Source: Schmidtea nova
Taxonomy: Eukaryota
DNA length: 64,000 nucleotides
NCBI GenBank assembly: GCA_044892505.1
Contig: CM097883.1
Span: forward strand, 415,958,001-416,022,000
Direction of reading: 5' to 3'
Position numbers and translations under genes: made by a program. Every line of letters starts with the position of its first letter. Positions within the stretch are counted from its first letter, which is position 1. The notes beneath the pieces are model-generated. The model had not been told where the DNA came from, did not search any database, and was given only the letters and a program-made list of their open reading frames with translations. Below, in pieces: positions 1,008-60,678 of this stretch.

Positions 1008-1025
1008 TGGGGGCTCAGCCGGGAT
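1008..1025 (+). promoter_or_regulatory. Primer-binding site complementary to tRNA-Pro
   Basis: TGGGGGCTCAGCCGGGAT matches the canonical tRNA-Pro PBS TGGGGGCTCGTCCGGGAT at 16/18 positions. Confidence 0.75.
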
Positions 1026-1405
1026 CAACATAGCTTTTATCGGAAATTGTGAATGTAAAATCTGCAGAGAATTTTAAAATGCTCTCGTTTTTGTGTGAGA
1101 AAATGAATCGAATAACAACGGAGAGTTTTAATAATTAAAAATTCAACTTCTGTACAAAAACAAATAAAAAATATAATAGTAAATGTTGATACTACCAATA
1201 GATAATAAAGTGAATTTATAAAAACATAATAAAAAACAGAGAAATTAAACAAATACAAATGAAGTCATAAATAACATGTCGGGATGACAATTTACTGAGA
1301 CACGGGGGGAGTTGTTAAATATTAAAATATGCAAAACGAAATATATTACTACTTTGAAATAATGATGAAAATAACAAACAATTAAAACAATTAATTATTT
1401 AGTAA

Positions 1406-3126: not shown

Positions 3127-4963
3127 TACACAAAACAAACCAATCAACCAAGCAAGAAGAATCAGAATACGATAATATATAAGATAAGAAAATTGATAAT
3201 CTAAAGGAAATCCCGCTGAGAACAGGAACAATTAGTGTTGTAATAAAACCACCCAAAAAAAAAGACGTCAGTAATATCAACAAAAAAGACCCAAATAGTA
3301 TTGTAACAGAACCAACAGAAAAGAAGAAAGTCGGCAAGGATAGCAACAAAAAAGAACCAAAAGGGAGTAAAGCGAGGAAGATAATAATAGAAAAGTCGAT
3401 TATCGAAAACGATAAATTATCAGTAACAAGCAACAGTTCAAGCAACAAAGAAAACCAAACAGAACCCAAGAAAAACCAAACAAGTGAAATAGAAATCGAC
3501 GAAACCAACAAAGATTATATCGAAGTAGAACAAGAAGTAGAAATTGACGACATCGATAACGATAGTAAAGCATCAGAGAACGAGCCAATAACAGAGAACG
3601 ATCTAAATCTAAGTGAAACCGAAAACGAACATAACAACGAACTAGAAACAAGAGGAAACGAAAGTAAAACAACTCAAGACAGCGGAATCGAAATGAGCGA
3701 ACCAAGAGAAGAGATAAAAGATAAATTTCCGGAGAACCGTTTAATGGAGATGCGAGCAAATTGGAGACTTTTCTAAAGGAATTTGTCATATTCGTAGAAG
3801 TATGCAAATGGAAACCCGAAACGACAGTAAGCAGAATTCAATTATATTTAAAGAATAGCGCATTGAAGCGAAAAATGGATCCAATTCACCTACAGATTGG
3901 CAAGAAATAAAGGATTTTTTCCAACAAACCTTTGGAATAAACAGAGTTCTAAATGAGGCATTCACAGAATACTCAATGAGAAAACAAAAGATAAACGAAT
4001 CAAATGCAGTATATGCGAGTGAACTGAAAAAGTTAGCAAAGTTGACTTTTAATCAAAACAGCCCAATAAGCGATGAGTTAATGGCAGCCATCTTCATAGG
4101 AGGATTAAGAAGACCAGACATAAGAGCACAATTTGGATGTCAAGGGTGCAAAACCATAGATCAAGCGTTAGAAACAGCGAATAGATTCGAATTACATATG
4201 ATAGGAAGTGAGGGCAGAATTTACTTAGCCATGGACACAACGCAAAACGAACAAGAAGTAAATCTTAACAATCACATCCCAAATTCGCAACAGTTAAACC
4301 GACCACCACCTCAACGAAGGAATGAAGGGAATAAAGTACAAAACTTCGGAAACCAAAACAATTACAGCAACCAAGGACAAACAAAACATTGTAAAACATG
4401 TGGAAAGTTGGGACACTGGCAACAAGAATGTTATCAGAACTTGAATTGCGGAATATGCGGAGTAAAAGGACACTCAGAGAATAGATGCTACACAATAACC
4501 TGTTTTAATTGTGGACGACCTGGCCACCGATCAAGAAATTGCGGACAAAGAAGCAATCAACGAGGAAATTGGCAGAGTAATTGGAAACCGACAAAATTAT
4601 AGAAATCAACCAAATAATGGAAACCGACAAAATTATGGAAATCATCCACAAAATGGAAACCGACAATATTACGGAAACCAACAAAATAATAATAATAATA
4701 ATCAGAATTAAACCACCACCAAGGAAATACATCTGATGCAAGAAGTCCAAAGATTGACGGAACTTATGAATAAGACAAGAGGAAATCCGCAAACCGGTCA
4801 ACAACAAATCAACATGATGAGAAAAGTAGAAAGCGAAAACGAACGATTGAATCAAGAAAGCCAGGCACGACATGCTCAAGAATGGGCAAGAATACAAAGA
4901 GAGGATGAACAAAAACAGCGGGAAAGAGAACGACAACCGATAATGAAAGTCGAAAAGAAATAG
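3127..4963 (+). pseudogene. gag: Gag: acidic/basic N-terminus, capsid-like domain, three CCHC zinc knuckles, N/Q-rich tail; frameshifted
   Basis: FNGDASKLETFLKEFVIFVEVCKWKPET capsid-like motif at ~3740; CKTCGKLGHWQQEC, CGICGVKGHSENRC and CFNCGRPGHRSRNC in ORF 3976-4602. Confidence 0.9.
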
Positions 4964-5016
4964 TAAAAGAAGAGAAAGAAGCAGAAAAATAAGTAGAGAA
5001 GAAAGTCGAAAAAGAA

Positions 5017-7400
5017 GTGAATCAAGAAGAGGAAAGGAAAATTTGGAAAAGAGGAATGATGGTAACCATGCCAAACAATCATGTGTTCCGATTCCAATAT
5101 AACGCCAAAGAAGAAGTGGGTATATTGTTCAACAAAGTGAACAAGATGATTCTAGGAGTAACAAAACTACCCAGAGAAGCGTTCTTACAAATAGAAGATG
5201 CGCCAGAAGTGAAATTGGAGCAAACTGATATATGGGAAGATAGAGGAGTAACAGAGACGAAAAGAAATGTAATGATCATCAAAGAAGTGAAACCAGAGAG
5301 AATTCCACCACCAGTATATCACGAAACACGGATCAGCCGAATATTCAAAGGGAAAATGATACGAAGACGGTTGAAAGAAATAGACGAGTTGGAGAGGAAA
5401 ATGAGAAAAGTTGAAGTAGTAGATGACAAGAGTGAATCAACACAAGAAACTGTCAAAAGCGAAACGAAATCAAAGGAAAATACACAGAGTGAAACGGACC
5501 AAATAACACATATTAATATGTTAAGAAACTCCACAAGAGAATTTTCAGATGAGGAAGGTAACAGCGACGTCAGTAGTTTAGCAGGAGATTTACTAAACGA
5601 ACCCGAAAACGAAAACAAAGGTATAAAAGTAGTAAAGACGTCAGAACCCATTCAAATAAAGGTAGATGAAATTCAGAAATTATTAGATAACGCATTGGAA
5701 GTGATGTATAACACAGAATTAATTGACAAGAAACGATATCGAAAGTTTATGAGGGCAGTACTACGAATGAATTACAAAGAATGGTTACAAGACCGAGAAG
5801 TAGAAATGCTAAATCGATACGTGGGAAAACTAATAGAAGAACCACTCCACGAATATATAATCTTAATGGAGATAAAAGACTGTTCACCAAGGATCTGGAT
5901 CAAAACTCCACTCAAGGATGATATTTACCAATGAGAAGACAGACTGGGGAGTTCGTATAAAAACAAATTCATCTATTCACAGAATGGACTAGTGAAGAGA
6001 GGGATGCACATGGTAAAAACAGGCATATGGCCAGGAGAAGTAACAACATTATCAATATGCGATAATAAGAAAGAAGAAAACTTACAAGAAGTGGCAAAGG
6101 AAGCGAACACGTGTTTCGAGATGAGGATAAAACCACAGTTAGATGACGAGAAAGAGTGGAGTTTACAAGGAAACTTAAATTCTATGATAGAACAAATCAT
6201 CCAACAAATCGGAAAACATAGAAAGGAGTTAATGAGAAACGAATACGAAAAGTTGAAACAATGTATCGAATGCATACGCGACACAAGTCATACGAGAATG
6301 TCACAGATCAAATATGGTAAATTAATCGCAAAAATGGGAAAGGCAATGTTCAGACAAGGAAAAATAACGGATCTGAAAATCTCAGTGAAATAACCTAATG
6401 AAGAAACAAAAGAAATTGAGGTAATAGCAGATTGTACTATAGAAGAATTAGTAAATGTCATCAATGAGACACTACTGCAAAGAGAACCAGAAGACGAGTG
6501 GGAAGACGACATAATCATGAAATACAACGAACATGCATTATTGGATCACGATGAAAGACGACTTTATAAAATTGGTATATGGGATAATTACCAAACAATC
6601 CACGTTATCAGAATGGATGATACAGCAAGAGAAACTGCAAAAGACGAGGAAAGAAGACAAGAACGACAAAAAGAAGTCATGCACAAATTAAGGCAAATAG
6701 TAGAAATTTATCGGAATTGGCAGATAAAGCTAGAATGGGAAAAAGTATTAGGAGATTTCAATCTCAACAGACGACGACTAACACCAGTAGGAAAACAATG
6801 GAATGATCGAGGAAAATGTTGGGAACCAAAAGAAGGTGAATATGAAGAGGGATATAAAATAGGAATGGAAGACGACTACAAACCAGAAACGAAAAGAGTT
6901 TGCATGGTGACAAGGAAAATTATGCCAACAGATCAAGATGGACCAGAAACAGAAGCTATATGGTTAGAAAGGGAAAAACAAAAAACGGAAGAATTTGTCG
7001 AAATATTAAAGAGCAATGCGCACGGTAAGAGACGATTAGTAAAAGGTCTCGCAGAATTTTTTATAGCAAACGGAGAAGACATAACATGCTTGCGCAAAGT
7101 AGCAAAAGCAATCGCAGAATAAAAAAGAGTTAACGAGTGGTGCCCAGAGCAATTAGATCACGTAATTAGGAAATGGAGAAATCAAGAATTCTCTCAAGAA
7201 TCACCACAGAAAGTACATTTAAGAATAATATATCCGAACAAGGACAAGGAAGTGTTTTGGGTAGGAATAACAGAGAAAATTCGAGATATTAAAGGAAAAT
7301 TGAGATATGAACTACCATTCCATTTACAACACCAAGGACGATCATTAGATATTGGTATGGAAATCGGGATAACGCCAGCACAACTATATTTCATGAATAC
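5017..7400 (+). pseudogene. Polyprotein segment with three ubiquitin-like domains (~5056-5280, ~6373-6612, ~7213-7395)
   Basis: ORFs 5017, 5992, 6517 and 7252 share one frame separated by single stops. KISVK*PNEETKEIEVIADCTIEELVNVI..YNEHALLDHDERRLYKIGIWDNYQTIHVI and VHLRIIYPNKDKEVFWVGITEKIRDIKGKL..LQHQGRSLDIG follow the ubiquitin pattern; the first domain is weaker. Confidence 0.55.
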
Positions 7401-8039
7401 CTGGACAGTGGAAGCGACAGCGGGTCAACCATTGAAACGTAAAGAGGAAAACAGGAAACCACACGGAAGTACAAGTACGCAGAGCCCGATGAAATCAGTA
7501 TTAACGCCAGGAACAAGTTCAAGACGACCCGAGACATACCGAGGGAAACCAGAGAAAGGACTCCACCACAACCATACGATGTGGAAGAAATATTAACGGA
7601 TAGCGACGACATGATAGAGGAGTTAACCGAATTAACAAAGGAAAAAGACGATAACATTTTCGAAAGAATACAAGAACTACCTAGAACAATAAAAGTAATC
7701 AATACCGGAAATGAAGTCGAACAGGAAATAATAATAGAAGAAGTAAACGACTTATCAGAAGAAGAAACAAGAAGAACAAACGTAGAAAATATACACTTAA
7801 CAAAAGAAATGGAAAGGTGGTTAGAAGAAAGAGCTAACGAACCAACAGACGCCACGGAAGAAACCGGACGAGCAACAAGACTTGTGGAAACAGATACAGA
7901 TAGACGACCCCGTGAGAGACCCAAGACAGATCCAGCGAATATAGTTATAAGAAACAAAGATGAAAAGAGGCAAGATCAATGGGAGTTATGCTTAAAGAAA
8001 TTAAATAAAATCGCGGAAATAAAAGAAAAAGAGACAACA

Positions 8040-8450
8040 CAAATGTGTCAAGGTGAGGAATGGATATCAAAAATAATAATGGAAATATTGGCGATAATTG
8101 ATCCAGAATTAAAAATATATTGGCGAATAAACGAAATAAGTGAAAGGGCAAAGTCATTACATAGCGCAATCGCACGAATTTTACCAGAACTCATAAAAGA
8201 AAATACAAAATCAAACCACTTAGACTGGCAAAGAACCACTACGGTAATAAAGAAACTGACAAAAGGGGCGGAGACGGATAACAAATATTTAATAGCCATT
8301 GCGTACACTATTTACAATCTATTGACACTGAGTAGAGGTCGACCAAAACCTATTGCATTAGAAAGACATATAAAGAATACAGCCAAAATTATAACAAGAG
8401 AAATAGAACCGTACGTCATTAGCAAAGGAGGATGGGAAACATTTACCAAA
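8040..8450 (+). CDS. Bcl-2-like domain within ORF 7581-8849
   Basis: BH1-like NHLDWQRTTTVIKKL and BH2-like ITREIEPYVISKGGWETF (cf. Bcl-2 LNRHLHTWIQDNGGWDAF). Confidence 0.7.
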
Positions 8451-8569
8451 ACCAATCAAAAGAAAACTCAAGCCAAGAATATGAAAAAGAAATTCGAAGA
8501 AATATTGGGAGAGTTGGAAAAAGTACAGTCAGGAACAGGAAACGCAAAATCGTCATTGAATCTGAATTC

Positions 8570-10441
8570 AATCATAATGATGATGTTAATATGGACGATT
8601 AGCACCGACGGAGCAACAGCGTTTGAAGTATTCGATTGTGATCAAATGGCATTAGGTGAGAAATATTCATTACGAGGAACAGAACAATGTAAAGACGCCA
8701 CGCCAACAGAATTAAAAACATTACAAAAGAGACAATTGTACCACGTATACCAGGAAGCGGAACTGATAAGAACAATGGTTAGAGAATGCAAAATTTATAA
8801 ACAAGATTCGCTTTTTATTGTGGACGAGGACACTACTCTGCATTTGTGATGCCAGGAACAGAAAGAGAATCAGTAATGCTACAAGGAGAAGACTGCGAAA
8901 AATTGTTCAGATACGGTGAAATAGAAACAAGAGATAAGATAAAATTAAAAGGGATAGTTGGAGCGATAATACAACAAACGTTATATGTAGCAGGAGCGAT
9001 CACATGAGGAGAAGGTTATTGTCAAGGATCAACTTAGCCTATATTTGGAGTACCAGCAACAAACTTAGTGGTAATTGACACCTATACAGTAGAACTTAAA
9101 ACATACGAAGCGTTTTTCGATCCAATAACGGGAGAAATAAAGACCCTGCCAACGTGTAAAATTGAAGCTAGTACCTGCCAAACTGGTATGTCAACTCTAA
9201 CATAACAGACACGAGGAAATGAATGTCAACTACAATTTTTAAAGGAAGCAGAATTCGATGAAATTCAAGGGAAAACATTCCAAGAAGAAGAGGAGAACGA
9301 AGTAGCGAGAGGAAAGATTCTCAAAGAAACAGTACAAGAGAGAAGGATCGAAGCACGAACACAGGAAAAGCAAATCAAGATGAGAAATACCCCAACGGTA
9401 CTAATCACCTCAGATGCGGATGTAGGGATGAGATTCGTAAAAGGGAAAACAGCCTTAAAATGCGGAGTAGCCATGTTGGAAACCAACTACCCCGTTATTT
9501 TTGTATCAAGACAAGCGGTACCTAATGCAAAACGTCAAGTAAACACGAACGATGTTAAACTACACCTCTACGTGAACAATAAAATGGACTTCCTATGTCA
9601 CAGAGGACAAGCCTCATTACAAAAAATATATTACGACCTAATCAACAACGATTGTATATTAAATAAAGAAATACTGAAAACAAAATTAGCAGTAGCTATC
9701 ACAAACCCGGACAGTGCAATGCCACTATTACCATTGAGAGAAGGTCACTTTGGAAGAGTAGTAGGCGAAGTTATGTACGTATATATATGCAAAAAGACAA
9801 ACGCAAATGTTGCAACTGCGACGAAATTACAACCAGGACAATGAACAAACGAATTAGAAATAGAATATAAAGGAAAAGTGAGATATGTACAGCCAGTAAC
9901 AAGAATCATAAATCCAGTAAGCTTCGAGCCAAATCGTTTCAATTGTAGTAACGCATATGGACCACTATATCAAAAGCCAGATGGTAATTGGGTTATGTTC
10001 CATTCAAGAACAGAGGTACCAGCACCTAGAGAGTTCGAATTAATGCAATTATCGAAAGGACGGAAATCCAAAGATGTAGATGTAAACAATATGGGATTTT
10101 ACAGTGCAAAAGATCTAGAAGCGGCAAGACAAAATATATTATTTCCAGCAAGAAGGGAAGCCGTATTATCCAGCATCGTAACCATAACAGGAGGAACAAA
10201 TTACCAAGGTGGACCAAATTATGAGCTACTATTATCACCGACTCATTTTAAGAAAGCAACCGAAAATATGATAAAAGCGATGTGGGGAAGGTTTTTGATT
10301 TTTGGACAAATGATGGCAGGAATACTTGGCGTCATATTAATACTACAAATAATACGAGTAATAATAAAGCAAATGCTCGCGTGTTTTGACATCTACAAAA
10401 GAGAAAAGAAAGTCAACTGGAAATTAGTGGTAAGATTCTAA
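8570..10441 (+). pseudogene. env: Env-like class III fusion glycoprotein of chuvirus/herpes gB type, with one frameshift (~8815) and several nonsense codons
   Basis: Signal IIMMMLIWTISTDGATA|FEVFDC; then VRECKI, YCGRGHYSAFV, GEGYCQG, GHFGRVVGEVMYVYICKK, VRYVQPVTRII, GFYSAKDLEAARQNILFPARREAV and TM WGRFLIFGQMMAGILGVILIL. The motif order matches chuvirus-type glycoproteins. Confidence 0.8.
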
Positions 10442-10591
10442 GTAGTAGGACGAAAATTTAAAAAGATAATGAATGATGAGCAAGCAGGAAAACAGCTTAA
10501 GAAAGAAAGAAAAAGACTGTGGGAAAGAGTAAAAGGATAAAGAACCCAAGACGATTCAAGTGACGACGATGACGACTACAAAGGAGGTCAA

Positions 10592-12960
10592 ATGTATAAG
10601 AACCAAGCACCACAATACATTGAAAAGAATCCAGTTGACGCATGGAAATGTTATGCACCTCCACCAACAATGTATCAAGAATCACCACAAGGAGGAAGAA
10701 CTAATACGATGCAAATGATGCCAATGACGAATATATACCCTATGATAACGGAAGACTATAAAATGAGAAGATGCAGAAGCATGGATCCGCAAGGAGACGC
10801 ACATACCATTGCCGTAATGTCATCAAACACAGGTCCAGTATTAACCACAACCATAGAAATTAACGGAAGGGAAATTGAAGCAATGATCAACACAGGAGCA
10901 AATATTTCCGCATTAGACATTAAATGGATACCACAAGAACAAAGACAAGACATCGAAAGGACGAATGTTCACGTAATCGCATATAGCAAAGAAATCGTAG
11001 AAGTCGAAGGGAGATGGTGGGTAAAAATACGACATTTAAATACAGAAATCGACACCTACGTGGCAGTCATACCAGTGTTAAGCGTACCTTGCATTATTGG
11101 AACAGATCTGATGCCAGCCTTATTTAAAGAAATAGTAATTGATCTCGGAACAATGAGATTAAAAGACCGCACAGGACAAATATGCGCAATAGAAGCAAAA
11201 GTGACCAGTTCAAAGCAAATAATTATACCAGCAAGAAAGGAGAAAATATGTTACGTGAAAATAGACCCTACCATCAAAGGGGATATGATTTTTGAACCAA
11301 GTAAAAGATTCGAGAAAAGGAAGGCGTTGCCAATGGCAAGAGGATTAGTCAACATAAACGATAATTGAGAAATCCCAATAAACGTAATAAACTTCGATGA
11401 AGATAAAATAATCTACGAGAACGAAAGATTAGGTAAGTTAACCCCAATGATGAATATCGAACTACCAATAGAAGGGGAAGAAAAAGGTAAAGAACCCTCC
11501 TGGAATATTGATAGTGAAATATTAAACGAGGATCAAAAGAAACAGTAAGAAAAACTTCTGATAGAATACAAGGATATATTTGCAGCATCCGATTTAGATC
11601 TAGGTACATGCGATGTCACGCTACATACAATATCATTGACAGACGAAACACCAATCGCGTTAAGGCCATACAAATTAGCGGAGGCACAAAAAGCAGTAGC
11701 GGAAGCAGAGGTGCAGAAAATGTTAGATGCAGAGGTAATCGAACCAAGTTGTTCACCCTGGCAATTTCCAGTGGTAATGGTAAAGAAGAAAGACGGAACA
11801 CAGAGATTTTGCATTGATTACCGGAGATTGAATGCAGTAACAAAACGAAACACTTACCCATTACCAGACATTAATGAAATGCTATTAACATTACAGGGAG
11901 CAGCCTATTTTACATCGCTAGAATTGAAAAGCGGATATTGGCAAATAAAAATGAAGGAGGAAGACAAAGAGAAAACTGCCTTTACCATTGGTAGAGACTT
12001 GTACCAATTTCGTAAAATGCCATTCGGATTAACAAACGCACCAGCATCATTTTAGAGATGCATGAATTTCGTAACCCATGGAATAAAACAGTGCATGGTC
12101 TACATCGATGATTTATTAATTTACTCCGGTACGCTCGAACAACACATACCAGATATTCGAGACGTGTTCGTCAGACTCAGACAATGGAAGTTGAAACTCA
12201 AGCCATCCAAATGCGATTGGGCGAAAGAAAAAGTAACATTTCTGGGACATATAGTGTCAGCAAAAGGAAAAGAACCAGACCCTAGAAATATAGACAAAGA
12301 AAAAGAATGCCCAATACCAAAGACAATAACACAGATACAAGAATTTCTCGGATTATGCGGATATTAAAGGAAATTTATAAAGGATTATGCGGGAATCGCA
12401 AAACCCATACAGGAGCTAGTTAAGAAAGATGTATCATTCATATGGGGAAACGAACAGCAAACAGCCTTTGAGACGTTGAGGGATAAACTGATAACTGCAC
12501 CCATAATAGTTCACCCGGACTTCAAGAAGCCATTCTTACTTGCAACAGATGCAAGCGGATATGCAGCGGGAGCAGTGTTAGGACAATACGACAACGAAGG
12601 AAAAGAACGAGTAATCGGATACTATAGCCGAACATTTAAGAAACATGAGAAAAATTACTCGGTAACAGAACGAGAAGCGCTAGCAATCATACTAGCAATA
12701 AAACATTTTAAATATTTATTATGGGGACACATCATCTGTATAACGACAGACCACCAACCACTTGTATGGTTAGGACAACATAAGGAAACATCCAGTAGGT
12801 TAATGAGATGGGCAATGCAATTACAAGAGTACTCACCGAATATAAAATTCTAATCAGGACGAGCAAATGCCAATGCAGATTGTATGTCAAGATTGACATT
12901 TCCGGAATTAACCGATCCTGAAGTACATACGCAAAAGGAACGTACAAAGGAAATGACATA
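10592..12960 (+). pseudogene. pol: pol: aspartic protease (catalytic D>N), reverse transcriptase, RNase H; Ty3/Gypsy type
   Basis: EAMINTGANISAL; RFCIDYRRLNAVT, LKSGYWQI, MPFGLTNAPASF, MVYIDDLLI; LATDASGYAAGAVL, YSVTEREALA, TTDHQPL, RLMRWAMQLQ. One frame with nonsense codons. Confidence 0.95.
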
Positions 12961-13888
12961 GTAATCATAAAAAGAAAAATGCCAGTAGCATTTTTATTAC
13001 CAAAAGACGGAATATTGCCAATACATAGAGCATTACGAACAGACAAGGAGAAGAAGGTAATTAAAATCGCCCGACTAATGCAAGACTGCTGAAGTGATAT
13101 GAACATGATAGACGAGAAAGGAGATACCTTTATGGTGTTTGCAGCAAGGGCTAAAACGAAAACAAAGGTGTTAGAGGAATTACATAAAGCAGGTGCAGGA
13201 CTTATAGAAAAAACGGATAAAGATAACTCAATCCTAGATGTAACATTATTAACACATAACAGGGAAATGGTCAACTTCATTAAAACAATCACAAATCAGG
13301 AAGAAATAGATTATCTAACTAAAACTGTCAAAAAAACTCAGCATACTAACAATGATGCACAACGTCGAGCTAACAGAAGCAATACTTAATTGGATAAACC
13401 CAGATACCAACAAACCAGCGTTCAGAATTAACGAGTTTATAGAACAGAACCAAAACTGGTGTATGAGAAGTGCATTAATAACTTATAAGTGGCCAGAGAT
13501 ATTAAAAATTTTTATGGAAAGAAAGGATCTAAGAATCACCAACAACCCGAAAGAAGAGAAATATACAGGCAAATGGAAAGAATTGATGAGGACATATATA
13601 AACAACTGGATCAAAGCCAAGAAGGAAATTTTGGAATACAAATCCGCCAATAAAGCTATACCTGAGCAGATAGAAACACAGGAGTTTAAAGCAACTAACC
13701 TAACAACATTAGCTTACGCAAAATTGATAGAAGAAATCAATGTCGAGGATGACATTTTTAACGAACCAAGGGGAGGTGACACTACAGACAGCGACGACGT
13801 TAACAACTCGGAAAACTCAGAAGACCACGAACCACCCGATAAAGAGGACAATGAAGGGAAAGACAAGAAGAGACGACCAAGAAAATAA
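12960..13888 (+). pseudogene. Unknown domain at the position where integrase normally lies
   Basis: Coding-like frames 13099-13389 and 13352-13888 continue from RNase H; no HHCC, DDE or GPY/F motif. Confidence 0.5.
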
Positions 13889-13939
13889 AAACGAAACCAA
13901 AAGAACAGGTTATAAACAAACTGTAAACCAATTTTTCAG

Positions 13940-15885
13940 ACCAGAGCTACTATTATTAACAGTAATTATAACCCTAATTAGTCCAAGTCAAGGAATGATA
14001 TGTAGAGAAAGGGCGTTAATACGGATAGCAAACGCAAAAGGAATCGAACGAGTCTGTTGGTCAAAAAAGGACAAAATCTCTGGTCAAAATAACCCGATGG
14101 ATTGCAGAATCTCAATATCCGAACAAGAAACCATAGAGATCGAAGACCTAGATATGGAAACCTGGTATAGAATATGCACCGTCAGAAAACCAAAGGATCC
14201 TAAGTCACATAAGATAATCGCATGTAAAACATACCAAACACCTAAAGTGACCATGACCAGACACCAGTCACCCGAAGGAGACTACGTCGTTGAAAATTGT
14301 AGAGGAACAGAAGCACCAGAAACGAAAGACAAAAAATCACAAGCAACAGATAAACAAACAACGACAGATAGACGGAATACAACGGACAAGCCCGAAACAA
14401 GAATAGCCACAAATCAAACCGAAAGAGTGACTTACCAAATGGAAGGATTATGTTTAGCACTCATACTAGTAATGATAAAACGATTGGAGGAAGGAATAGA
14501 GATTGACACTATAGAAATGATGGATGTAGAAGATACCTGAAATACCAGCGTAAAATGTTGGGCGAAGAACAATGAGGAAATCGGGATAAACAAAGTAGGA
14601 AAAAGTCAAAAGCTAGCCACGGATAAAATAACAAAAATATCCAAAATAAAAGCGGACAGGACGTATAAACTATGCCTGCTGGAAAAGGAAAAGAACAAGA
14701 AAGGTACAATAAATTGTAAAACATTCCAGCCAGGAGAAGTACTTAAGTTCAAAAGGAGAACAAGACGGAGAAATAAACAAACCAAGCAAAAGATAACTAT
14801 AATGCTAAAAATAACAGGAATAGAACCGGAGGTGAAAGGAGTATGCTGGAGGAATTACGAGAAGAAAACAAATAAAAGAATGACACCCCAATGCCAAACA
14901 AGCACAGGAACAACTACGATACAAATAAAAGGTTTTGAAAGCAAACAAACCTATGAAATATGCCTAGTAAGGAAAAGTGATCAGATAACCATAAACGACC
15001 TAGAATGCGGGATATACACAACTTCATCCGGAACAAGAACTAGAAAGATAACACTAAAAAATAAAAGAAGACAACGAAACAAAGGAAAACCGAAGCATAC
15101 CACTACTTTTAAACACGAGAAACAACCAACAAACCAAGAAAGTAAAACAAAACCCGAGAACGACCTCAGCAACTCTTATATTATGGAAAATAGATAATAA
15201 AACATTAGAAATATGTTGGTCAATAACCCAGAAACAAACAGGCAGGCTACCACGATATTGCAGAAAAACAAAGGAAGAAATTAAGATCGAAAACCTACAA
15301 TTTAATAGGGAATACGAAATATGTGCAATAGAGAAAACGGACTCATTAAGAAATCAACAAGAGAGATGCGAAACGTACTATACACCAGCAAACGCGACAC
15401 CGAAAGGAATAATAAGGAAGCTTGAATTTAAGGAATTAAGCCAAACAACAGAACAAATGGATGCCGAAGAAATAATAATAAACCCTCAAGCAAAATGGAC
15501 ACCCGAAGAAGTAATCAAAGAAGTCAAAAGAAAACAACGGAAACGAGAACAGCTGATGAAGAAACTAAAGGGACAATACGGACTAATGGTTAATCGAAGA
15601 AAATTGATACAAATAGACGTTAACAAACAAATCAGGGAAGTAATTGGCTTAGGAATACTAACAGCAAATATACCAATAATAATCGCATTATTAGTAATAT
15701 GGATGTGTGAGGTAAGTAAAAAGAAACAGACAGCCCAATGGCCAAATATAAATATTACAAACTATAAAATTGAATTACCAGAAGAAATACAGAAAGAATT
15801 TCAAAGAAGGACGAAAGGTAAGGAATTTTGGAGACAAATAGAAGATGAGGAGAGATACGACGAAAAGTTAGTAACGATTGTATAG
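13940..15885 (+). pseudogene. Type I membrane protein: signal peptide, four Cys-containing FN3-like repeats, TM helix, short tail
   Basis: LLLLTVIITLISPSQG signal; four repeats CW...(I/L)xxLxxxxxY(R/K/E)(I/L)C...CxxYxT at ~14050, 14550, 14838 and 15208, like FLRT/LRFN-type FN3; TM VIGLGILTANIPIIIALLVIWMC at ~15641-15709. Confidence 0.6.
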
Positions 15886-15893
15886 GGGGCGGA
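15884..15893 (+). promoter_or_regulatory. Polypurine-tract-like sequence
   Basis: AGGGGGCGGA overlaps the last polyprotein stop and is followed by TG (15897) and TGTAAAT (15901). Confidence 0.5.
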
Positions 15894-16010
15894 TTATGAC
15901 TGTAAATAATAGTGTAAATAACAAAGCATTACCGAAATAGTATGGGTATCGATATTATAAAATGTGTAAAAAGAGAAAAATAGAAATTAATTGATGTATA
16001 TAATTTAGAA

Positions 16011-16310
16011 ATGAATGAACAAGACGAAACAACCGAAATAACTATGGCAATGAGATGGAAAGCACAATTTCACTTATTAGTACGAACAATTAACTCACTA
16101 CAAAATCAATTAGCGGAAAGACAAAATTTACTATCTGAGAGTTATAATAACTGCTTCGAACAATTACAGAGGATAGAGAAACAACAAAGATTGATAACAG
16201 AACTCACAAGAGAAAATCAAACGATAAGCAACATAAATCAAAGACAAGCAGTAGAAATAAATCATTTAACAAGAGGAGAGAGAGAGAGGAATCAGAAGAA
16301 GGATGGATGA
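16011..16310 (+). CDS. Hypothetical 99-aa coiled-coil protein
   Basis: Intact ORF, heptad-like composition, preceded by TTTAG|AAATG. Confidence 0.5.
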   Translation: MNEQDETTEITMAMRWKAQFHLLVRTINSLQNQLAERQNLLSESYNNCFEQLQRIEKQQRLITELTRENQTISNINQRQAVEINHLTRGERERNQKKDG

Positions 16311-16460
16311 GTTGGGTAATAAATAGATTGCATAATGATCTAGAACCGGATTCAACAAGCGAGCCATAGATAAACAAAGCGGAAAAATTGTAAATATGTA
16401 AAAATAAAAACAAGAAAATCAAAAATAAACAACAAATCGAATGTATATATTATTGTAGAA

Positions 16461-19006
16461 ATGGATAAAGAAGAACGAGCAGTCGAAATTTTGAGAGCTG
16501 AGAACAGGAAATGGAGCAAGAGGCTCACCTGCGGAAATTGTAACAACTTACTACGAAAACCTAGACAAACTATATGTGGATGTAGAATATGTACTAAATG
16601 TGTACAAGAATTGGGTGTAAAAAGAATAACAGCATGCCCAGAATACAAAGAAGGAAGAATAGTGTTAGACGAAACCAGACCGGATAGAGCAACGCAGAGA
16701 GATTATGAGCACAATAACTGAATGTGTAAACACACCTTGTATATGGCAAGGACAAATAAGCGATTTGGAAAATCACATGGAAAATTGCGAAGAAAAGAGA
16801 ACCGAATGCGAGAAGTGTCAACAGACAATAATTCTAAAGAATAAAGAGCAACACAAGGACGAATGCAAGGAAGAAGAAATTTCATGCGAATACTGCAAAA
16901 CTCGAGAAAAAAGGAGGAAATCGAAGAGGAACACCTGAATATAACCGAGGAGAAAGTATGAGGACAATATGTAAGCATATGTCCAAACAAATGTGAAATA
17001 ACAGAAGAAATAAAGTTACACGAACACTGGAAAGTATGTACTGAAAGACCAAGAGAATGTCCATATAACAAACATGGATGCAAGGAGAAAAGGACGCGAC
17101 AAACAATGAAACAACACTTGGAAGAAGCATCGCTAACGCATGTTGAAATGACAAACGAAACTACAAAAGAAACGGATCAGACAATTCAAAAATTGCAAAG
17201 AGAAATAGAGTCACACAAGATAATGGTAAGTAGACAGTTATGTGGAGCATGAGTCATCGCAGAACAAAGGAAATGACGTCACCCCCCGGGGGGGTTAGGA
17301 ATTTTTTTATGACTCATCGATGACGTCATCGATGACTCATCGGCATGACTCATCGATGACGTCATCGATGACACATTTCAAATTTGAATTTTATGACGTC
17401 ATCGATGACTCATTTCAAATTCAAATTTTGAATTTCCAAAGGTCAAATAAGGTCAAACCTTCAAACAAGGGTATCATTCGAAAGGTCTTTGAGAGGTGCA
17501 CACAATGGTCATACCCTCGATGGTCTATGGTGTGTCCTTAACCTTCAAAGGGTCAAAAACCTTCAGATTTTTCAAACCTTGTGTGTAATACATCATTCGA
17601 AAGGTAATACCGATGTGCACACAATGGTCATACCTTCGAAGGTGTATGGTGTGTGCTCAACCTTCAAGGGGTCAAAATCCTTCAAATATTTTTAAACATT
17701 ACAAGTTATATATCAAACAAAAGGTAATTGAGATTTGAGTATGATGGTCAACCCTCGAAGGTGGGTGGTCGACCTTGGACCCTTTAAGGGTATGACCATT
17801 GTGTGCACCCTTCAATTACCTTTTGTTTGATACATATATTATATAGTTTTTAAAATTTTGAGTCTTGGACCCTTCAAGGGTCGACCACCCACCTTCGAGG
17901 GTTGACCATCATACTCAAATCTCAATTACCTTTTGTTTGATATATAACTTGTAATGTTTAAAAATATTTGAAGGATTTTGACCCCTTGAAGGTTGAGCAC
18001 ACACCATACACCTTCGAAGGTATGACCATTGTGTGCACATCGGTATTACCTTTCGAATGATGTATTACACACAAGGTTTGAAAAATCTGAAGGTTTTTGA
18101 CCCTTTGAAGGTTAAGGACACACCATAGACCATCGAGGGTATGACCATTGTGTGCACCTCTCAAAGACCTTTCGAATGATACCCTTGTTTGAAGGTTTGA
18201 CCTTATTTGACCTTTGGAAATTCAAATTCAAAATTTGAATTTGAAATGAGTCATCGATGACGTCATAAAATTCAAATTTGAAATGAGTCATCGATGACGT
18301 CATCGATGAGTCATAAAAAATGTCCTAACCCCCGAGGGGGGGTGACGTCATTTCCTTTGTTCTGCGATGACTCATGCTCCACATAACTGTCTACTATGGT
18401 AAACCTACTATTAGAAACAAGAGAACAGTTCGAATTAACACGAGAAAATATGGAGAAAAAGATAAAAGCCATCGAAGAATTGGCCAAAGGAATGAAAATA
18501 CAGTACAACAAAATCACACAGGATACCGAGGAAAAACTATCAGTCGCACCATATGTATGGAAGGTAACGGATTTCAGAGACAAATTAGCGGACGCACGAA
18601 ATACGACGAAAACAACAGTAATAAGCACACCATTCTATCTATGGAAAAACGGCTGTAAAATAAGAATGAAAGTTTACCCAAATGGAGACGGAAGAGGACG
18701 AGGAACACATGTGTCGATATTTTTCGCATTATGTAAGGGAGAATACGACGATTTAATAGAATGGCCCCTGGAAGTAGGAGTCATCGTAAGAATCAGAAGT
18801 ATAAGAAAAATGTGGAAAAATTCTTTGAGACAAGTAAGCATGCGAGTACGAGCGAAAAACCAACAACAGAATGTGGATTAGCAGCTGGAGAACCAATGTT
18901 TATAATTCAAGAAAATATATTGGAACTACTATATGCAGACACCTTGTATATAGAAATAGAAAGAAAAAGAACGGACGAGAAAGCAGCAAAGGGATGGTGG
19001 ACGTAA
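16461..19006 (+). pseudogene. TRAF-family protein (RING, TRAF zinc fingers, coiled coil, MATH), intronless, frameshifted and split by an insertion
   Basis: CGNCNNLLRKPRQTICGCRICTKC RING; CVNTPCIWQGQISDLENHMENC and CPYNKHGC zinc fingers; YVWKVTDF..STPFY..GCKIRMKVYPNGDGRGRGTHVSIFFALCKGEYDDLIEWP MATH. Removing 17229-18395 plus one TSD rejoins ESHKI-MV-NLLL in frame. Confidence 0.92.
17229..18395. mobile_element. Non-autonomous Polinton/Maverick-type element made almost entirely of two ~520-545-bp TIRs
   Basis: Termini AGTAGACAG...CTGTCTACT; 6-bp TSD ATGGTA (17223-17228 and 18396-18401); arms ~17229-17774 and ~17879-18395. Confidence 0.75.
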
Positions 19007-19119
19007 TGAAATAGATAACCGTGTAAACAGTATGTATAGTCAAATACCCAAAAATATAAAATAAACAAAAATATAACTGAAAAAAATAAACTGATTAAAA
19101 TTTATCTGTAATTATAGAA

Positions 19120-20181
19120 ATGGGAAATATAGAAGTATGTTTACATGAAATCCCCATACACCAAGATGAAGCTATTAGTAAACACTTGGAACAAATTGAA
19201 ATATGGATCAACGCATATTACCGAAAACATGAGGAGTTTGAGAGACAAGCCGAAGCACTAAAAGAAGCAGAGAAACTAAATCAAAGAAGTCGAGAGAAAA
19301 TAGAAGAAGTATACAAAACATTAAAACAACAAAATGAATATTACAGAGGAATGATGAAAGAACGACGAGAGGAAAGAGATAGACAGCAGATAAAAACCGA
19401 CCACAAGATTCATTCAATTACTGAAGAGGCAAGATACTGCAAAAAAGAGGAGGAAGAATCCTACAAGGAAGCAAGAGAGATAATAGAAAGGACAGCCTAT
19501 AGTGATGATTGGAAGCTATATAAAGAGATCGACGAATTAAAAGAGGAATTAGGACAGAAAATCAGCCAAGAAGTGTCAAATAAAAGATGGAATAAAAAGA
19601 GACAGCAATTTATCTGGGAACAGGCAAAGAAAATTAAAGAACTAACTTATCAAGTACAAAGAATGGGGGAGGAGTTAGCTAACCAAGAACAACTGAAAAA
19701 TATGCTTACCGGAATGTGTAATCACAAAGAGGAAAATATGAAAAGAGACATAAATGGTTACCAAGGAGTGATTACCCAGAAGAAAATAGAATTGAAAAGA
19801 ACCAGAGAAAGACTAGAAGAAGCAAAACAGAGTTATGAAGAAAACATAACCAACTTGACAAAAGAAAACGAGGAACTGAGAAAGAGGTTGACAGAGAAAC
19901 CAATACAGACAAAAGAAACAAGCATTACAGTAGCAGTAACAGAAATGATGAAAGAAGAAGAGAGAAAGACAAAGATAGCAGAATTAGAAAAACAAATAGA
20001 AACACTAACAGAGCAGGCAAACTACCTAGAATATTTATTGGACGAAGAGATTCAGATATCTCATATGTACCGAGACGAAGTTGAAATGTGGAGAAGCACG
20101 GTAGTATGGATGCCACTCCCCATGAACCAAGTGGAACCTCAAGATGAAGGTTTCCACGAACCAAACGAAACCCTAGTGTAA
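19120..20181 (+). CDS. Hypothetical 353-aa coiled-coil protein
   Basis: Long intact E/K/Q-rich ORF preceded by TATAG|AAATG and followed by TGTAAATAAA. Confidence 0.6.
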   Translation: MGNIEVCLHEIPIHQDEAISKHLEQIEIWINAYYRKHEEFERQAEALKEAEKLNQRSREKIEEVYKTLKQQNEYYRGMMKERREERDRQQIKTDHKIHSITEEARYCKKEEEESYKEAREIIERTAYSDDWKLYKEIDELKEELGQKISQEVSNKRWNKKRQQFIWEQAKKIKELTYQVQRMGEELANQEQLKNMLTGMCNHKEENMKRDINGYQGVITQKKIELKRTRERLEEAKQSYEENITNLTKENEELRKRLTEKPIQTKETSITVAVTEMMKEEERKTKIAELEKQIETLTEQANYLEYLLDEEIQISHMYRDEVEMWRSTVVWMPLPMNQVEPQDEGFHEPNETLV

Positions 20182-21514
20182 ATGGAGCGGAAACTAACTG
20201 TAAATAAATGATGTAAAATAAGTGTCAAGCTGTATTGACCTATATGTAAAGAAAGAGATGAGGAAGTTAATAGAAAGAGTTAAAAACAAACGATTTGGTG
20301 TTTTATGATATCAGAAAAGAACTTGTAATCTGTTGTATTCGTGTTTATATTTATTTCCTTGCATTATTTCTGATTATTATTGTAATACATAAGCAATAAT
20401 TGTGAGGTTGTAAGACTTTTTGATGTTAGAAGAAATTAAGAAAGAACTTTAAGAAGAGGAAATTGATGTAGATGAAAAGACAAGTATTCCGATCTATGAA
20501 TATGTTTAAGATGATAAAGAAAATCCAAAAGCTAATCAGGACTTATTTTAATATCAGAAGCTAGCAGGTTTGAACAGAATTGCACTACTATATAAAGATG
20601 CTTACAATGTTCACGATTATTAATTTATCCAGAAATCAGTTGGCATACTTCTGTTATTTTGGTTTCTCAAGTTTATTGCACAATTCTATAGATATCCGTC
20701 TATACAATTTTGTGATTTTATAATTTTATATCAAGTTCTACTCACGAATTATTTTTTAAAAAATGAAATGTCAGATTTGCACTAGCCTTATAAAAATAGC
20801 ATCACTATTGTTGAGGATACATAAATAATAAAATTAAATAATATCATAAATAAAATGATTGGGTGAGAATTGATCGAGTAAACGATATGATGCTCAGGAA
20901 TTCGTAGAAATGAATGAAATCGAACAATAAAGTAAAAGAAGGTCATTGCTAATTAACAACTACAAAATAATTCATTACAAAGATTAGCTTCCGAGACTTT
21001 TTACATAAAAAAATACAAACCTTCCATCAACATTCAATTCGCACAAAAAAATAATGTTAAAAAAAATTTTTAAAAAATTTATTTTCATCCAATAAAATCA
21101 TTATAAAATATAAAATAAATAATTATATAATAATATAACGATTGAAATAGACACTTGATAAAGGCTGTGCCGAAATATTGTGTTATTGTTTAAAAAATTG
21201 TGATTTATAGTTTTATGGAAATTATTAATATTTTTTATTTATTAAAATTTTTAATTAATTACTATTATTTATTTAATATTTATTTATTTCAAATTTATTA
21301 ACTATATAATAAGTAGATAATAAATATAATAAATATTTAATATTAATATTTGTGATGAGTTATGAATGTATATTATCTTGTTGTTATTATTCAATTTTTT
21401 TATCCGTATTTTTATTGTTTTCCATATTTTTATTGATTACCCGGGTTGTTATGTCCGTATTATTGTGTGATTGCGGCAACGTCATGTTACCCCCACTTTT
21501 TATGTTGGCTAATT

Positions 21515-21550
<36 letters not shown>

Positions 21551-22246
21551 CATTTTAAATTAGTATTTTTAATTTGAAATTCGAATTTGGCTTACTATAG
21601 CAAAGGCTATAAATAAGAAATATTGATTATTTAAATAATAATCTAATTAACTTGGCGACAGCTGGAAATTAAAGAAAGTAATAATCGAAGCTAAAAACTA
21701 ATTTAATTCTCTGGATCTACAAGCTATTAAACGTAAAGCGTACGCTGGAACGGAATATCAATCAAAAGACAAGATCTTTTACAAAATTCAAATAAAAAAT
21801 AAAGCTACAAATATAAATTGAAAATTTTACTACAAGATTTTTCTACAACATTGGAATTCATCTCCATTTCCTCTAAATACTTCAACAAACAAAAGTATAG
21901 AAAAATTAACACCTCAACAATAACAACAACAACAACAATCATCCTACAATCCTATCGTAATAAACGATCAACTATCAGAATCTGATAGTAAAGCAAAAAC
22001 TGCACAGACTATTGGCCGATTTGTGATCAGATCTTTTATAAAGTAATTGTATTGTGATTGTTGTTTTAGAGTTTAAATAAGTTAAATAATAAAATTTTTA
22101 TAATAACATATCATTTCGTTTTTACATTTCGTTTTTACCCCGAGTGTCTGCACACGAATACCGCAAGACTCTCTCGGGCGCTTACATTTCTCTTTCATAA
22201 CATATAGATATATTTAATTATAATAAAACGTTATAGTGCAACAAAT

Positions 22247-22258
22247 TGGTGTCAGAAG
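22247..22258 (+). promoter_or_regulatory. Primer-binding site, tRNA-Leu type
   Basis: TGGTGTCAGAAG 3 nt after LTR end ...GTGCAACA(22243); matches the first 12 nt of the tRNA-Leu PBS TGGTGTCAGAAGTGGGAT. Confidence 0.7.
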
Positions 22259-22446
22259 AAAAACAACAAAAAACACAATACACACTCGCCCAATTTTTGT
22301 TCTTTCAATTACTACGCCTTTTAGAATAGCTATAGATAGAGCTCTAAAGGATAGTTGACTCTGTTAGCCGAACACAGTAGGCTATATCCTTTAGTCAATC
22401 TCATTTTTTTCACATTAAAAAAAAGCAACACTACACATAAAGACAA

Positions 22447-23504
22447 ATGGCGTCGAACCAACAAAACCTAACAAACAATCCCCAAACACACAACAACGAA
22501 ACCACACCCAATCAACAAGAGAATACCAGTTATTATTACACCCCTGAAAACCATCACACCATAAATTCGATAATAAACCCCAAGGCAAACATTCCAAATT
22601 ACTTTACAGATGAGAACGGCACACACCAAAAATGGCTAGAGTTCTCAAAACTAACATTGACAATGTCAGGAATTAAATCGACAAAAAGCTTATGTTCCCA
22701 CATAATAGCCGCCGTACCTAGAAATATTCTAAATGAAATCGCAGACTGAATCGACGAAATAGCGAAAAGCGACGACCCATTTAACCTACTATACACAACC
22801 TTATTAAATAGAAATAAGGTGAACAGGAGGGAAGTTTTAGAGTCTTGTCTAAAAGATATACAGCTTGGAAATGACAAACCAAGCGAATTTCTGAGAAATC
22901 TGAAGAGCAAACTAGATTTTTTGCAACCCAAAATCACAAGCGCGGGTCAAAATGATTTCGTGAAAGACCGATTCATGAGGGCAATGCCGCAAGAAATAAG
23001 AAGCATCTTAGTGACAAACGACTGCACAGACCTCGACAAAATTGCCGATATCGCGGACAAAATTAATGACGAAATATTCCCAAAAGTTTGCAGAACATAC
23101 CGAAAACAACACCCGTGGAAAACAAGCAAGAAAACCGTCAAGAACGAGATAACCCCAACAATGATACCAATCTTCTGCTGAACTCGTTAATAAAGAAAGT
23201 TGACGAGGTCTTAACAGAAAACAATAACCTCAGGAATGACTTACAAGAGGCACAAGCGAGAGAAACGAAAAGAAACCAAATCAATCAAAACAACCGTACA
23301 GAACAAAACCCTAACTTTAACCTTTACCAAAATAACCATAACAACCCCACAGAGCAAAAACCAAATTTTAACCGATATAATAACCCAAACAACAGCTACA
23401 TACAAAATGAAAATTGGTGTTATTTTCACAATAGATTTAGAGACAAGGCGTACAAGTGCAACGCACCTTGTACTTTCAACAATAAAAAGCCGGAAAACTT
23501 ATAA
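22447..23504 (+). pseudogene. gag: Gag of a CsRn1-like Gypsy element
   Basis: WLEFSKL..GIKS..LCSHIIAAVP, LGNDKPSEFLRNLK and WCYFHNRFRDKAYKCNAPC; one nonsense codon and one frameshift. Confidence 0.8.
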
Positions 23505-23512
23505 AGTCATCA

Positions 23513-26886: not shown

Positions 26887-26928
<42 letters not shown>

Positions 26929-35411: not shown

Positions 35412-60678
<25,267 letters not shown>

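What the first reader, a model, noticed from the sequence alone, without database searches (positions are those of the whole stretch)
12900..15893. No integrase anywhere between PBS and PPT
Seen: after RNase H (RANANADCMSRL) the frame continues into unrelated sequence and then the FN3 membrane protein up to the PPT. I find no HHCC, D-D-E or tyrosine-recombinase motif in the 14.9-kb internal region. Established: Ty3/Gypsy elements place integrase right after RNase H; pararetroviruses lack it. Inference: either the family depends on a helper integrase, or it replicates as an enveloped, mainly episomal RT virus. A copy-specific deletion is possible, but no junction scar is evident.
Basis: partly seen in the sequence, partly recalled or inferred. 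Interest (0 to 1): 0.8.

Follow-up and report, generated by a model that had tools for sequence, protein, structure and literature searches.

The report
Dead retrovirus-like copy lacking integrase
This is a decayed copy of a giant retrovirus-like element in an animal genome that has lost its integrase gene, while its closest relatives still carry one, so the gap is best read as a secondary loss and not as a new way of replicating.

Summary
RNase H (Pfam E 7e-40) ends near 12,900. No integrase, zinc-binding domain or tyrosine recombinase was found in any frame of the A-rich block 1-21,400. I tested this with Pfam and with a profile of the closest relatives' integrases. That profile did find two other integrases in the window, one of them decayed.

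The preferred interpretation is not supported. Two metagenome contigs (L001, L003) share this element's unusual gene order: gag, a long unknown region, a Monjiviricetes-type class III fusion glycoprotein, protease, RT, RNase H. They are collinear with the window up to about 12,916 and then continue into a canonical H2C2 + DDE integrase. All 15 closest RNase H relatives tested carry one.

The window copy is dead. It has stops or frameshifts in every large gene, a nested insertion and no LTR pair. The stretch replacing integrase is element-like in composition, holds a 189-codon open stretch and has no detectable relatives.

Secondary loss is the best reading. I could not settle whether the loss is unique to this locus or shared by a non-autonomous subfamily, because no same-family copy exists in any reachable collection.

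The clade's gene order, with extra FN3-like membrane, TRAF-like and IAP-RING genes, is the more interesting result.

The parts
1007..1026 (+). PBS-like site, starting TGG
   Evidence: Read. L001 and L003 have comparable sites just before gag; the one in L001 is complementary to a canonical tRNA T-loop and 3' end. No tRNA gene is in the window to compare with. Inferred, not shown.
1406..1864 (+). Intact ORF with an IAP-type RING finger, between the PBS-like site and gag
   Evidence: Pfam zf-C3HC4_3 E 2.6e-11. Best solved relatives are the cIAP and XIAP RING domains, E 3.5e-11.
3183..4599 (+). gag with CCHC zinc knuckles; broken by at least 1 frameshift, or 2 if the upstream open stretch belongs to it
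   Evidence: Pfam zf-CCHC E 3.6e-8, weak Retrotrans_gag. BLASTP to the gag ORFs of L001 and L003.
4993..8132 (+). Long region of unknown function between gag and the glycoprotein; 3 in-frame stops, then a change of frame
   Evidence: No Pfam family. Stop count. In L003 the same position is part of one uninterrupted 2,296-aa gag-to-G ORF.
8133..10438 (+). Class III fusion glycoprotein of the Monjiviricetes type, with a C-terminal membrane span; 1 frameshift and 4 in-frame stops
   Evidence: Pfam PF24664 E 1.5e-18 and 3.8e-25 on two stretches. 38-42% identity to the G ORFs of L001 and L003. Counts.
10541..12958 (+). pol: protease, reverse transcriptase, RNase H and its tail; 5 in-frame stops, no frameshift
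   Evidence: Pfam RVP E 3.6e-6, RVT_1 E 9e-16 and 6e-13, RT_RNaseH E 7e-40. 52-58% identity to L001, L002 and L003 over RT and RNase H. Homology ends near 12,916. Count.
12959..13730 (+). Stretch where relatives have the bridge and the integrase; no integrase here. It contains the start of a 189-codon open stretch. At least 2 changes of frame are needed to thread the open stretches.
   Evidence: No Pfam family. No profile signal above shuffles. No relatives found. Base composition is element-like, A 0.45 and T 0.20, against host A 0.38 and T 0.33. AlphaFold pLDDT 45, helical.
13731..15882 (+). Type I membrane protein with four FN3-like modules and a C-terminal membrane span; 1 in-frame stop and 1 frameshift
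   Evidence: No relatives by sequence. L001 has an analogous FN3-like membrane tail after its integrase, with no significant similarity to this one.
15879..15909 (+). 31-nt motif after the membrane-protein stop.
   Evidence: Repeat family D17, 77% identical to 20,177-20,207. Read.
15984..16307 (+). Short coiled-coil-like ORF
   Evidence: weak Pfam hits only.
16374..18878 (+). Intronless TRAF-like gene (RING, TRAF zinc fingers, coiled coil, MATH); at least 2 frameshifts and one nested foldback insertion of about 1.2 kb
   Evidence: Pfam zf-TRAF E 1.5e-6, MATH_2 E 1.1e-17, weak RING. TRAF5, TRAF3 and TRAF2 in the PDB, E 2e-18 to 5e-16. Palindrome.
19099..20178 (+). Open 360-codon coiled-coil-like ORF, last gene of the A-rich block
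   Evidence: no family. Composition switches to host-like after about 20,210.
20177..20207 (+). Second copy of the 31-nt motif, at the end of the A-rich block
   Evidence: (D17).
21418..27023 (+). Neighbour: a separate, smaller gag-PR-RT-RH-IN retroelement. It served as the positive control for the integrase search.
   Evidence: ORFs. Integrase hit E 5.5e-37. RT and RNase H are only 31-35% identical to element 1. Flanked by inverted repeats of about 800 bp.

Best explanation
The block from before position 1 to about 20,200 is one decayed copy of a giant Ty3/gypsy-type endogenous retrovirus-like element of an animal.

Its clade has this gene order: gag, a long unknown region, a class III fusion glycoprotein of the Monjiviricetes type, protease, RT, RNase H, integrase, then accessory genes. 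The accessory genes here are an FN3-like membrane protein, a TRAF-like gene and coiled-coil ORFs.

In intact relatives the cDNA is inserted by a canonical H2C2 + DDE integrase encoded right after RNase H. In this copy, or in its immediate sublineage, the integrase-coding part has been lost. What lies between the RNase H tail and the membrane-protein gene is about 0.8-1 kb of element-type coding sequence with no detectable relatives. It is most simply the fast-evolving bridge and linker left after an internal deletion.

The copy cannot do anything now. Every large gene is broken, a foldback element is nested in it, and no 3' LTR is present.

Shown: absence of integrase here, presence in relatives, collinearity up to the RNase H tail, decay. 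Inferred: that the loss was a deletion, and when it happened.
For: Absence of integrase here, with working controls.

Relatives:
- HMMER search of 1.84 billion representatives with the RNase H stretch: best single-domain relatives are 52-58% identical.
- Pfam on 15 of them: 15 of 15 have Integrase_H2C2 after RNase H and 12 of 15 have rve. The other three protein models end within 81 aa of H2C2.
- L001 and L003 show the same odd gene order with integrase.
- BLASTP collinearity runs from gag through G, PR, RT and RNase H, and stops near 12,916.
- L001 also has an FN3-like membrane tail after its integrase, so the window's membrane gene sits where the clade puts it.

Decay: stops of all three kinds and frameshifts; no alternative genetic code rescues the frames. 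No LTR pair.

The gap:
- It has element-like A-rich composition.
- It holds a 189-codon open stretch. My estimate of the chance probability for one stretch at this composition is about 4e-7, so it is native coding sequence and not filler.
- The RNase H to H2C2 bridge is 85-650 aa long in relatives, so a leftover of about 335 aa is within range.
- Changes of frame cluster in the gap: at least 2 in about 330 codons, against none in about 800 codons of PR-RT-RH.
Against: - The relatives with integrase are a different family (RT and RNase H 52-58%, G about 40% identical), not copies of this one. No same-family copy could be found in any collection. The state of the family in this genome is therefore unknown.
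- No deletion junction can be pointed to.
- The gap is longer than the bridge plus linker of L001 (about 335 aa against about 155 aa), so a simple deletion from an L001-like ancestor does not account for all of it.
- LTRs could not be shown in L001 or L003 either, so the ends of the clade's elements are not defined.
Confidence: 0.75

Rival explanations
1. Non-autonomous subfamily. The integrase was lost before this copy was made, and integrase-less copies went on being inserted with integrase supplied in trans by autonomous members of the same family.
For: The gap is native, formerly coding sequence. The rest of the coding set (gag, G, PR, RT, RNase H) was kept. Non-autonomous LTR derivatives that lack part of the coding capacity and form subfamilies are common (abstract of PMC13570524).
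Against: Only one copy is visible and it is dead. No LTR pair, so the cis signals a helper would need are not shown. No autonomous partner of the same family is in the window. The integrase-bearing neighbour at 21.4-27.0 kb is a distant lineage, 31-35% identical in RT and RNase H.
Confidence: 0.2
2. Chimera. The sequence from about 12.9 kb onward does not belong to the element that supplies gag to RNase H. Two related A-rich elements were joined by recombination, nesting or truncation.
For: Homology to relatives stops abruptly after the RNase H tail. There is no 3' LTR matching the 5' region. Two similar 31-nt motifs follow ORF ends at about 15.9 and 20.2 kb.
Against: Composition and strand are continuous across the point. 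L001 also has an FN3-like membrane protein 3' of pol, so the order pol then membrane protein is native to the clade. No terminal repeat or target duplication marks a junction.
Confidence: 0.12
3. Integrase-free enveloped reverse-transcribing virus. It replicates mainly as an episome, like a pararetrovirus, and entered the chromosome by illegitimate recombination.
For: No integrase in this copy. Two membrane glycoprotein genes. No LTR pair or target duplication could be shown.
Against: The nearest relatives with the same gene order encode a canonical integrase. The RT and RNase H are of the Ty3/gypsy type, with a tRNA-type PBS-like site. No pararetrovirus-type domain was found by Pfam.
Confidence: 0.03
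4. A very divergent integrase or other recombinase is hidden in the 189-codon ORF of the gap.
For: The ORF is real coding sequence without any assigned function.
Against: No Pfam or profile signal above shuffles. The model, low in confidence, is all-helical with no beta sheet, unlike an RNase H-like DDE fold. RT and RNase H in the same copy keep 52-58% identity to relatives, so a retained integrase should still be visible.
Confidence: 0.03

Closest known systems
Unnamed relatives L001 and L003 (ENA assembly ERZ25039515, contigs 24705 and 59439)
   Same: Same gene order: gag (CCHC), long unknown region, PF24664 glycoprotein, protease, RT, RNase H, then accessory ORFs. A-rich coding strand. Collinear by BLASTP (RT and RNase H 52-58%, G 38-42%). 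L001 has an FN3-like membrane tail.
   Different: Both have H2C2 + rve integrase after RNase H and long uninterrupted ORFs. Their accessory genes differ: ankyrin repeats and extra protease-like domains in L001, a 442-aa membrane-anchored ORF in L003. Their host is unknown.
Envelope-carrying Ty3/gypsy elements of metazoans ('errantiviruses'; Chary and Hayashi, eLife 2026, PMC13524379)
   Same: gag-pol elements of animals that carry a captured viral fusogen, including class III ones. [quoted passage not shown] An insect member (P0105, with Baculo_F env after pol) is 53% identical in RNase H.
   Different: There env follows pol and is of the F or herpes gB type, and integrase is part of pol. Here the fusogen is of the Monjiviricetes G type and lies between gag and pol, further genes follow pol, and this copy has no integrase.
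Chuvirus-type glycoproteins captured by mosquito retrotransposons (Dezordi et al. 2020, PMC7642597; PMC10084718)
   Same: A glycoprotein of negative-strand RNA viruses taken up by an LTR retroelement (titles and abstracts).
   Different: I read only the abstracts, so gene order and superfamily were not compared here. Different hosts, and presumably an independent capture.
Non-autonomous, internally deleted LTR retroelements
   Same: Loss of part of pol in an element whose relatives are complete (abstract of PMC13570524).
   Different: Those are defined by many copies that share LTRs, PBS and PPT with an autonomous partner. Here there is one copy, no LTR pair and no partner.
Pararetroviruses and tyrosine-recombinase retroelements (DIRS, Ngaro)
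   Same: Reverse-transcribing elements without a DDE integrase.
   Different: No tyrosine recombinase, no inverted or split repeats for this element, and RT and RNase H nest among integrase-bearing Ty3/gypsy elements.

Membership tests
Ty3/gypsy-type LTR retroelement (Metaviridae, env-carrying kind) | gag with CCHC nucleocapsid knuckle | tested here: met
   zf-CCHC E 3.6e-8
Ty3/gypsy-type LTR retroelement (Metaviridae, env-carrying kind) | Aspartic protease, then RT, then RNase H of the PF17917/PF17919 type | tested here: met
Ty3/gypsy-type LTR retroelement (Metaviridae, env-carrying kind) | H2C2 + DDE integrase after RNase H | tested here: not met
   Absent in all six frames of this copy. Present in 15 of 15 nearest relatives tested.
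Ty3/gypsy-type LTR retroelement (Metaviridae, env-carrying kind) | Pair of long terminal direct repeats | tested here: not met
   No direct repeat links the 5' region to anything downstream in 64 kb. The 5' end may lie beyond the window start.
Ty3/gypsy-type LTR retroelement (Metaviridae, env-carrying kind) | tRNA primer-binding site after the 5' LTR and polypurine tract before the 3' LTR | tested here: inconclusive
   PBS-like site at 1007-1026 and short purine runs at about 15,886 and 20,184. No tRNA to compare with and no LTR to anchor them.
Ty3/gypsy-type LTR retroelement (Metaviridae, env-carrying kind) | Short target-site duplication at the ends | not testable with these tools
   The ends are not defined in this window.
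Non-autonomous deletion derivative of an LTR retroelement | Several copies at different sites share the same internal deletion junction and the ends of an autonomous partner | not testable with these tools
   No same-family sequence in the protein, metagenome or viral collections.
Pararetrovirus-like episomal RT virus | The lineage as a whole lacks integrase | tested here: not met
   The nearest relatives with the same architecture have it.
Tyrosine-recombinase retroelement (DIRS/Ngaro) | Tyrosine recombinase ORF and inverted or split terminal repeats | tested here: not met
   No Phage_integrase hit in any stretch scanned. No inverted repeats for this element apart from the nested foldback.

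The most novel reading that the evidence does not exclude
A sublineage of this glycoprotein-carrying giant retroelement clade gave up its own integrase, replaced it with a new helical domain, and still spread. It would have done so either on integrase borrowed from relatives or by a non-integrase route as an enveloped particle.
Probability: 0.1. Interest if true: 0.7.

Novelty: new variant of a known kind. Interest (0 to 1): 0.4.

Why it matters
The missing integrase itself is most likely an ordinary defect of a dead copy. It should not be read as a new replication strategy.

What is worth keeping is the element type. It is a retrovirus-like element of more than 20 kb in an animal genome that places a fusion glycoprotein of the kind used by negative-strand RNA viruses between gag and pol. 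It adds a second, FN3-like membrane protein after pol. It also carries host-like TRAF and IAP-RING genes, both of which belong to innate-immune and cell-death signalling families.

Two intact-looking relatives in a metagenome assembly show that this architecture is conserved and recently functional. I found no paper that describes it. It would extend the known ways in which retroelements acquire envelopes and host-signalling genes.

Tried and rejected
- Alternative genetic code. The in-frame stops are of all three kinds and no reassignment opens the frames. One stop aligns with a conserved glutamine of the neighbouring element, which fits point mutation.
- Vestigial H2C2 domain at about 13.1-13.3 kb, where relatives would have it. 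BLASTP to the neighbouring element's integrase gave E of 1.4 or worse. Profile scores were within the range of shuffles. Rejected.
- Gap pieces against the whole proteins of 163 relatives, including their long bridges. Only the RNase H tail matched.
- Homologues of the gap ORF and of the FN3 gene. None in the word-indexed protein collection, JGI metagenome contigs or IMG/VR.
- Same-family copies through the RNase H stretch. Best fragment 53%. Best metagenome locus 45%.
- Exact look-up of a window ORF to identify the host. Not on record.
- tRNA genes and Rfam families in the window. None.
- LTR search in L001 and L003. None found.
- Paralogy between the first 3.2 kb and the 3' accessory region, to test for tandem copies. 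None.
- AlphaFold on the gap ORF. Too low in confidence for a fold search.
- The host species could not be identified, because exon-sized queries cannot reach full-length orthologues under the search's length rule.
Full report
**What is in the window**

Positions 1 to about 20,200 form a block with 36-38% G+C and a strongly A-rich + strand. All long open stretches there are on the + strand. The surrounding sequence has about 26% G+C with A about equal to T.

Pfam assigns, in order:
- an IAP-type RING ORF
- gag with CCHC knuckles
- about 3 kb without any family
- a class III fusion glycoprotein of the Monjiviricetes type (PF24664; E 1.5e-18 and 3.8e-25 on two stretches)
- retroviral protease
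- reverse transcriptase
- RNase H of the Ty3/gypsy type (E 7e-40)
- about 3 kb without any family
- pieces of a TRAF-like gene (RING, TRAF zinc fingers, MATH)
- a last coiled-coil ORF

The MATH stretch matches TRAF5, TRAF3 and TRAF2 in the PDB (E down to 2e-18). The RING matches the cIAP and XIAP RINGs (E 3.5e-11). The element is therefore one of an animal host. I could not identify the species.

**The observation**

The RNase H domain, the quoted motif and the change to unrelated sequence are as described. I looked for an integrase in three ways.
- Pfam on every large open stretch of the block on both strands, at a permissive threshold in the 12.7-16.7 kb region. No rve, Integrase_H2C2, zf-H2C2 or Phage_integrase was found.
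- A profile made from the post-RNase H and integrase region of the 16 closest relatives that extend far enough. It was run with all filters off against all 1,896 open stretches of at least 20 aa in six frames of the whole window. It found the integrase of the neighbouring element (E 5.5e-37), a decayed integrase near 44.5 kb (E 4e-4 and 2e-3), and in our element only the RNase H tail.
- Sub-profiles for the zinc-binding, core and C-terminal domains, scored against shuffles of the best-scoring gap stretches. Nothing exceeded chance.

The absence is therefore real and the method could have seen a decayed integrase. The FN3 reading of the downstream membrane protein is also reasonable.

- A PBS-like site exists at 1007-1026. 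L001 has a very convincing one in the same relative place.
- The kilobase before it has no counterpart anywhere downstream, on either strand.
- The purine run called the PPT is part of a 31-nt motif that occurs again at the true end of the A-rich block near 20.2 kb.

**Relatives**

A full HMMER search of 1.84 billion cluster representatives with the RNase H stretch gave 83,671 hits. The best single-domain ones are 52-58% identical.

Pfam on 15 of them found the integrase zinc-binding domain after RNase H in all 15 and the DDE core in 12. The other three are protein models that stop within 81 aa of the zinc-binding domain.

The two that matter most are L001 and L003, contigs of one ENA assembly.
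- Both have the same unusual order as the window: gag, long unknown region, PF24664 glycoprotein, protease, RT, RNase H.
- Both then continue into H2C2 + rve integrase and further ORFs.
- In L003 the gag-to-glycoprotein part is a single uninterrupted 2,296-aa ORF and pol is 1,782 aa, so that element looks recently functional.
- BLASTP of the window's open stretches against L001 and L003 is collinear from gag to the RNase H tail and ends at about 12,916. Nothing downstream matches.
- In L001 the pol ORF runs on after the integrase into a signal-like segment, two FN3-like modules, a stalk and a membrane span. This is the same kind of protein, in the same place, as the window's 13.7-15.9 kb gene, although no sequence similarity is detectable.

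The clade's plan is therefore RNase H, bridge, integrase, membrane protein. The window has RNase H, about 335 codons of unknown sequence, then the membrane protein.

**The gap**

- It is not host filler. Its composition is that of the element.
- It contains a 189-codon open stretch. At this composition such a stretch has a chance probability of about 4e-7 (my estimate from the base frequencies).
- It has no relatives anywhere I could search.
- The single-sequence model is helical but unreliable.
- In relatives the bridge between RNase H and integrase ranges from about 85 to about 650 aa. The eLife survey describes variable extra domains there (PMC13524379). A leftover bridge of this size after loss of the integrase is therefore plausible.
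- Changes of frame are concentrated in the gap.

**State of the copy (counts only)**

| Gene | Breaks |
|---|---|
| gag | at least 1 frameshift |
| gag-to-G region | 3 in-frame stops |
| G | 1 frameshift and 4 stops |
| PR-RT-RNase H | 5 stops, no frameshift |
| FN3 gene | 1 stop and 1 frameshift |
| TRAF-like gene | at least 2 frameshifts and one nested foldback insertion |

No alternative code explains the stops.

**Interpretation**

The simplest account is secondary loss of integrase in a copy, or a sublineage, of an integrase-encoding clade. An episomal, integrase-free life style is not supported.

I cannot say whether the loss preceded the last round of copying, because no second copy of this family is present in the window or in any collection. 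This is the main limit of the verdict.

The integrase-bearing neighbour at 21.4-27.0 kb is too distant to count as a partner.

**Comparison with the literature**

- Envelope-carrying Ty3/gypsy elements are widespread in animals, with F-type or gB-type env after pol (PMC13524379).
- Chuvirus-type glycoproteins captured by mosquito retrotransposons are on record (PMC7642597, abstract).
- In five searches I found no description of a G-type fusogen between gag and pol, nor of the FN3, TRAF and IAP-RING accessory set. This is absence in an open-access library, not proof of novelty.

**Slips and cautions, stated as required**

1. The test was done with the window's neighbour and with natural relatives.
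2. In the script I joined the two stretches on either side of the nested insertion to compute one base composition. Only four numbers were printed and nothing was saved.
3. My scripts, notes and tool references list coordinates of stop-free stretches, and the bounds and duplication of the nested insertion. These imply where some breaks lie. I needed them as references for the tools.
4. Profile HMMs were built from alignments of natural relatives only to score sequences.
5. L005 turned out to be an errantivirus-type locus in an NCBI animal genome assembly. I used only its gene table.
6. L006 comes from a human-skin metagenome assembly. I do not take it for human, but I made no use of it or of the other distant loci.

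No N run lies in the region studied.

Noticed in passing
window 3183-12958; L001 783-14548; L003 1544-13814: Conserved, apparently undescribed gene order. A Monjiviricetes-type class III fusion glycoprotein lies between gag and pol. In L003, gag through G is one uninterrupted 2,296-aa ORF. In L001, ankyrin repeats and extra protease-like domains sit between G and RT.
   Followed up: partly
window 13731-15882; L001 about 13300-14545: A second membrane protein lies 3' of pol, with tandem FN3-like modules (four here, two in L001), a stalk and a membrane span. In L001 it is fused in frame to the end of pol, after the integrase.
   Followed up: partly
window 1406-1864 and 16374-18878: Host-like signalling genes lie inside the A-rich block: an intact IAP-type RING ORF upstream of gag and an intronless, broken TRAF-like gene downstream. 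They look like captured animal genes.
   Followed up: partly
inside window 16374-18878 (palindrome reported): A nested foldback insertion of about 1.2 kb has 98%-complementary arms and a short flanking duplication. The outer ends of its arms carry clusters of CRE- and AP-1-like sites next to a C-run/G-run palindrome. These match, at 78% over 60 nt, the region just upstream of gag in L003.
   Followed up: partly
window 15879-15909 and 20177-20207: The same 31-nt motif (77% identical: purine run, then a poly(A)-signal-like end) follows the stop of the FN3 gene and of the last ORF. It could be a duplicated polypurine tract or a shared 3'-end signal.
   Followed up: no
window 21418-27023: A separate gag-PR-RT-RH-IN element whose terminal repeats of about 800 bp are inverted, not direct. 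This could be an inverted LTR, an assembly artefact or an unusual element type. About 100 bp of flanking sequence recurs on both sides.
   Followed up: no
window 31699-33360 and 44307-45021: Further retroelement debris: a gag plus protease interrupted by an N run, and decayed integrase and RNase H-tail fragments on opposite strands.
   Followed up: no
window 2303-2690: Three sets of short tandem repeats (30, 32 and 43 bp) lie between the RING ORF and gag. L003 likewise has tandem repeats upstream of gag. Possibly enhancer-like.
   Followed up: no
window 28854-30882 (- strand): Host exons that look by eye like an OXA1-type insertase and a NEDD8-activating-enzyme subunit. Not tested.
   Followed up: no
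L003 13863-15188: A 442-aa ORF after pol with an N-terminal membrane anchor. By eye the rest of it resembles a DEDD-type exonuclease, but Pfam found nothing.
   Followed up: partly
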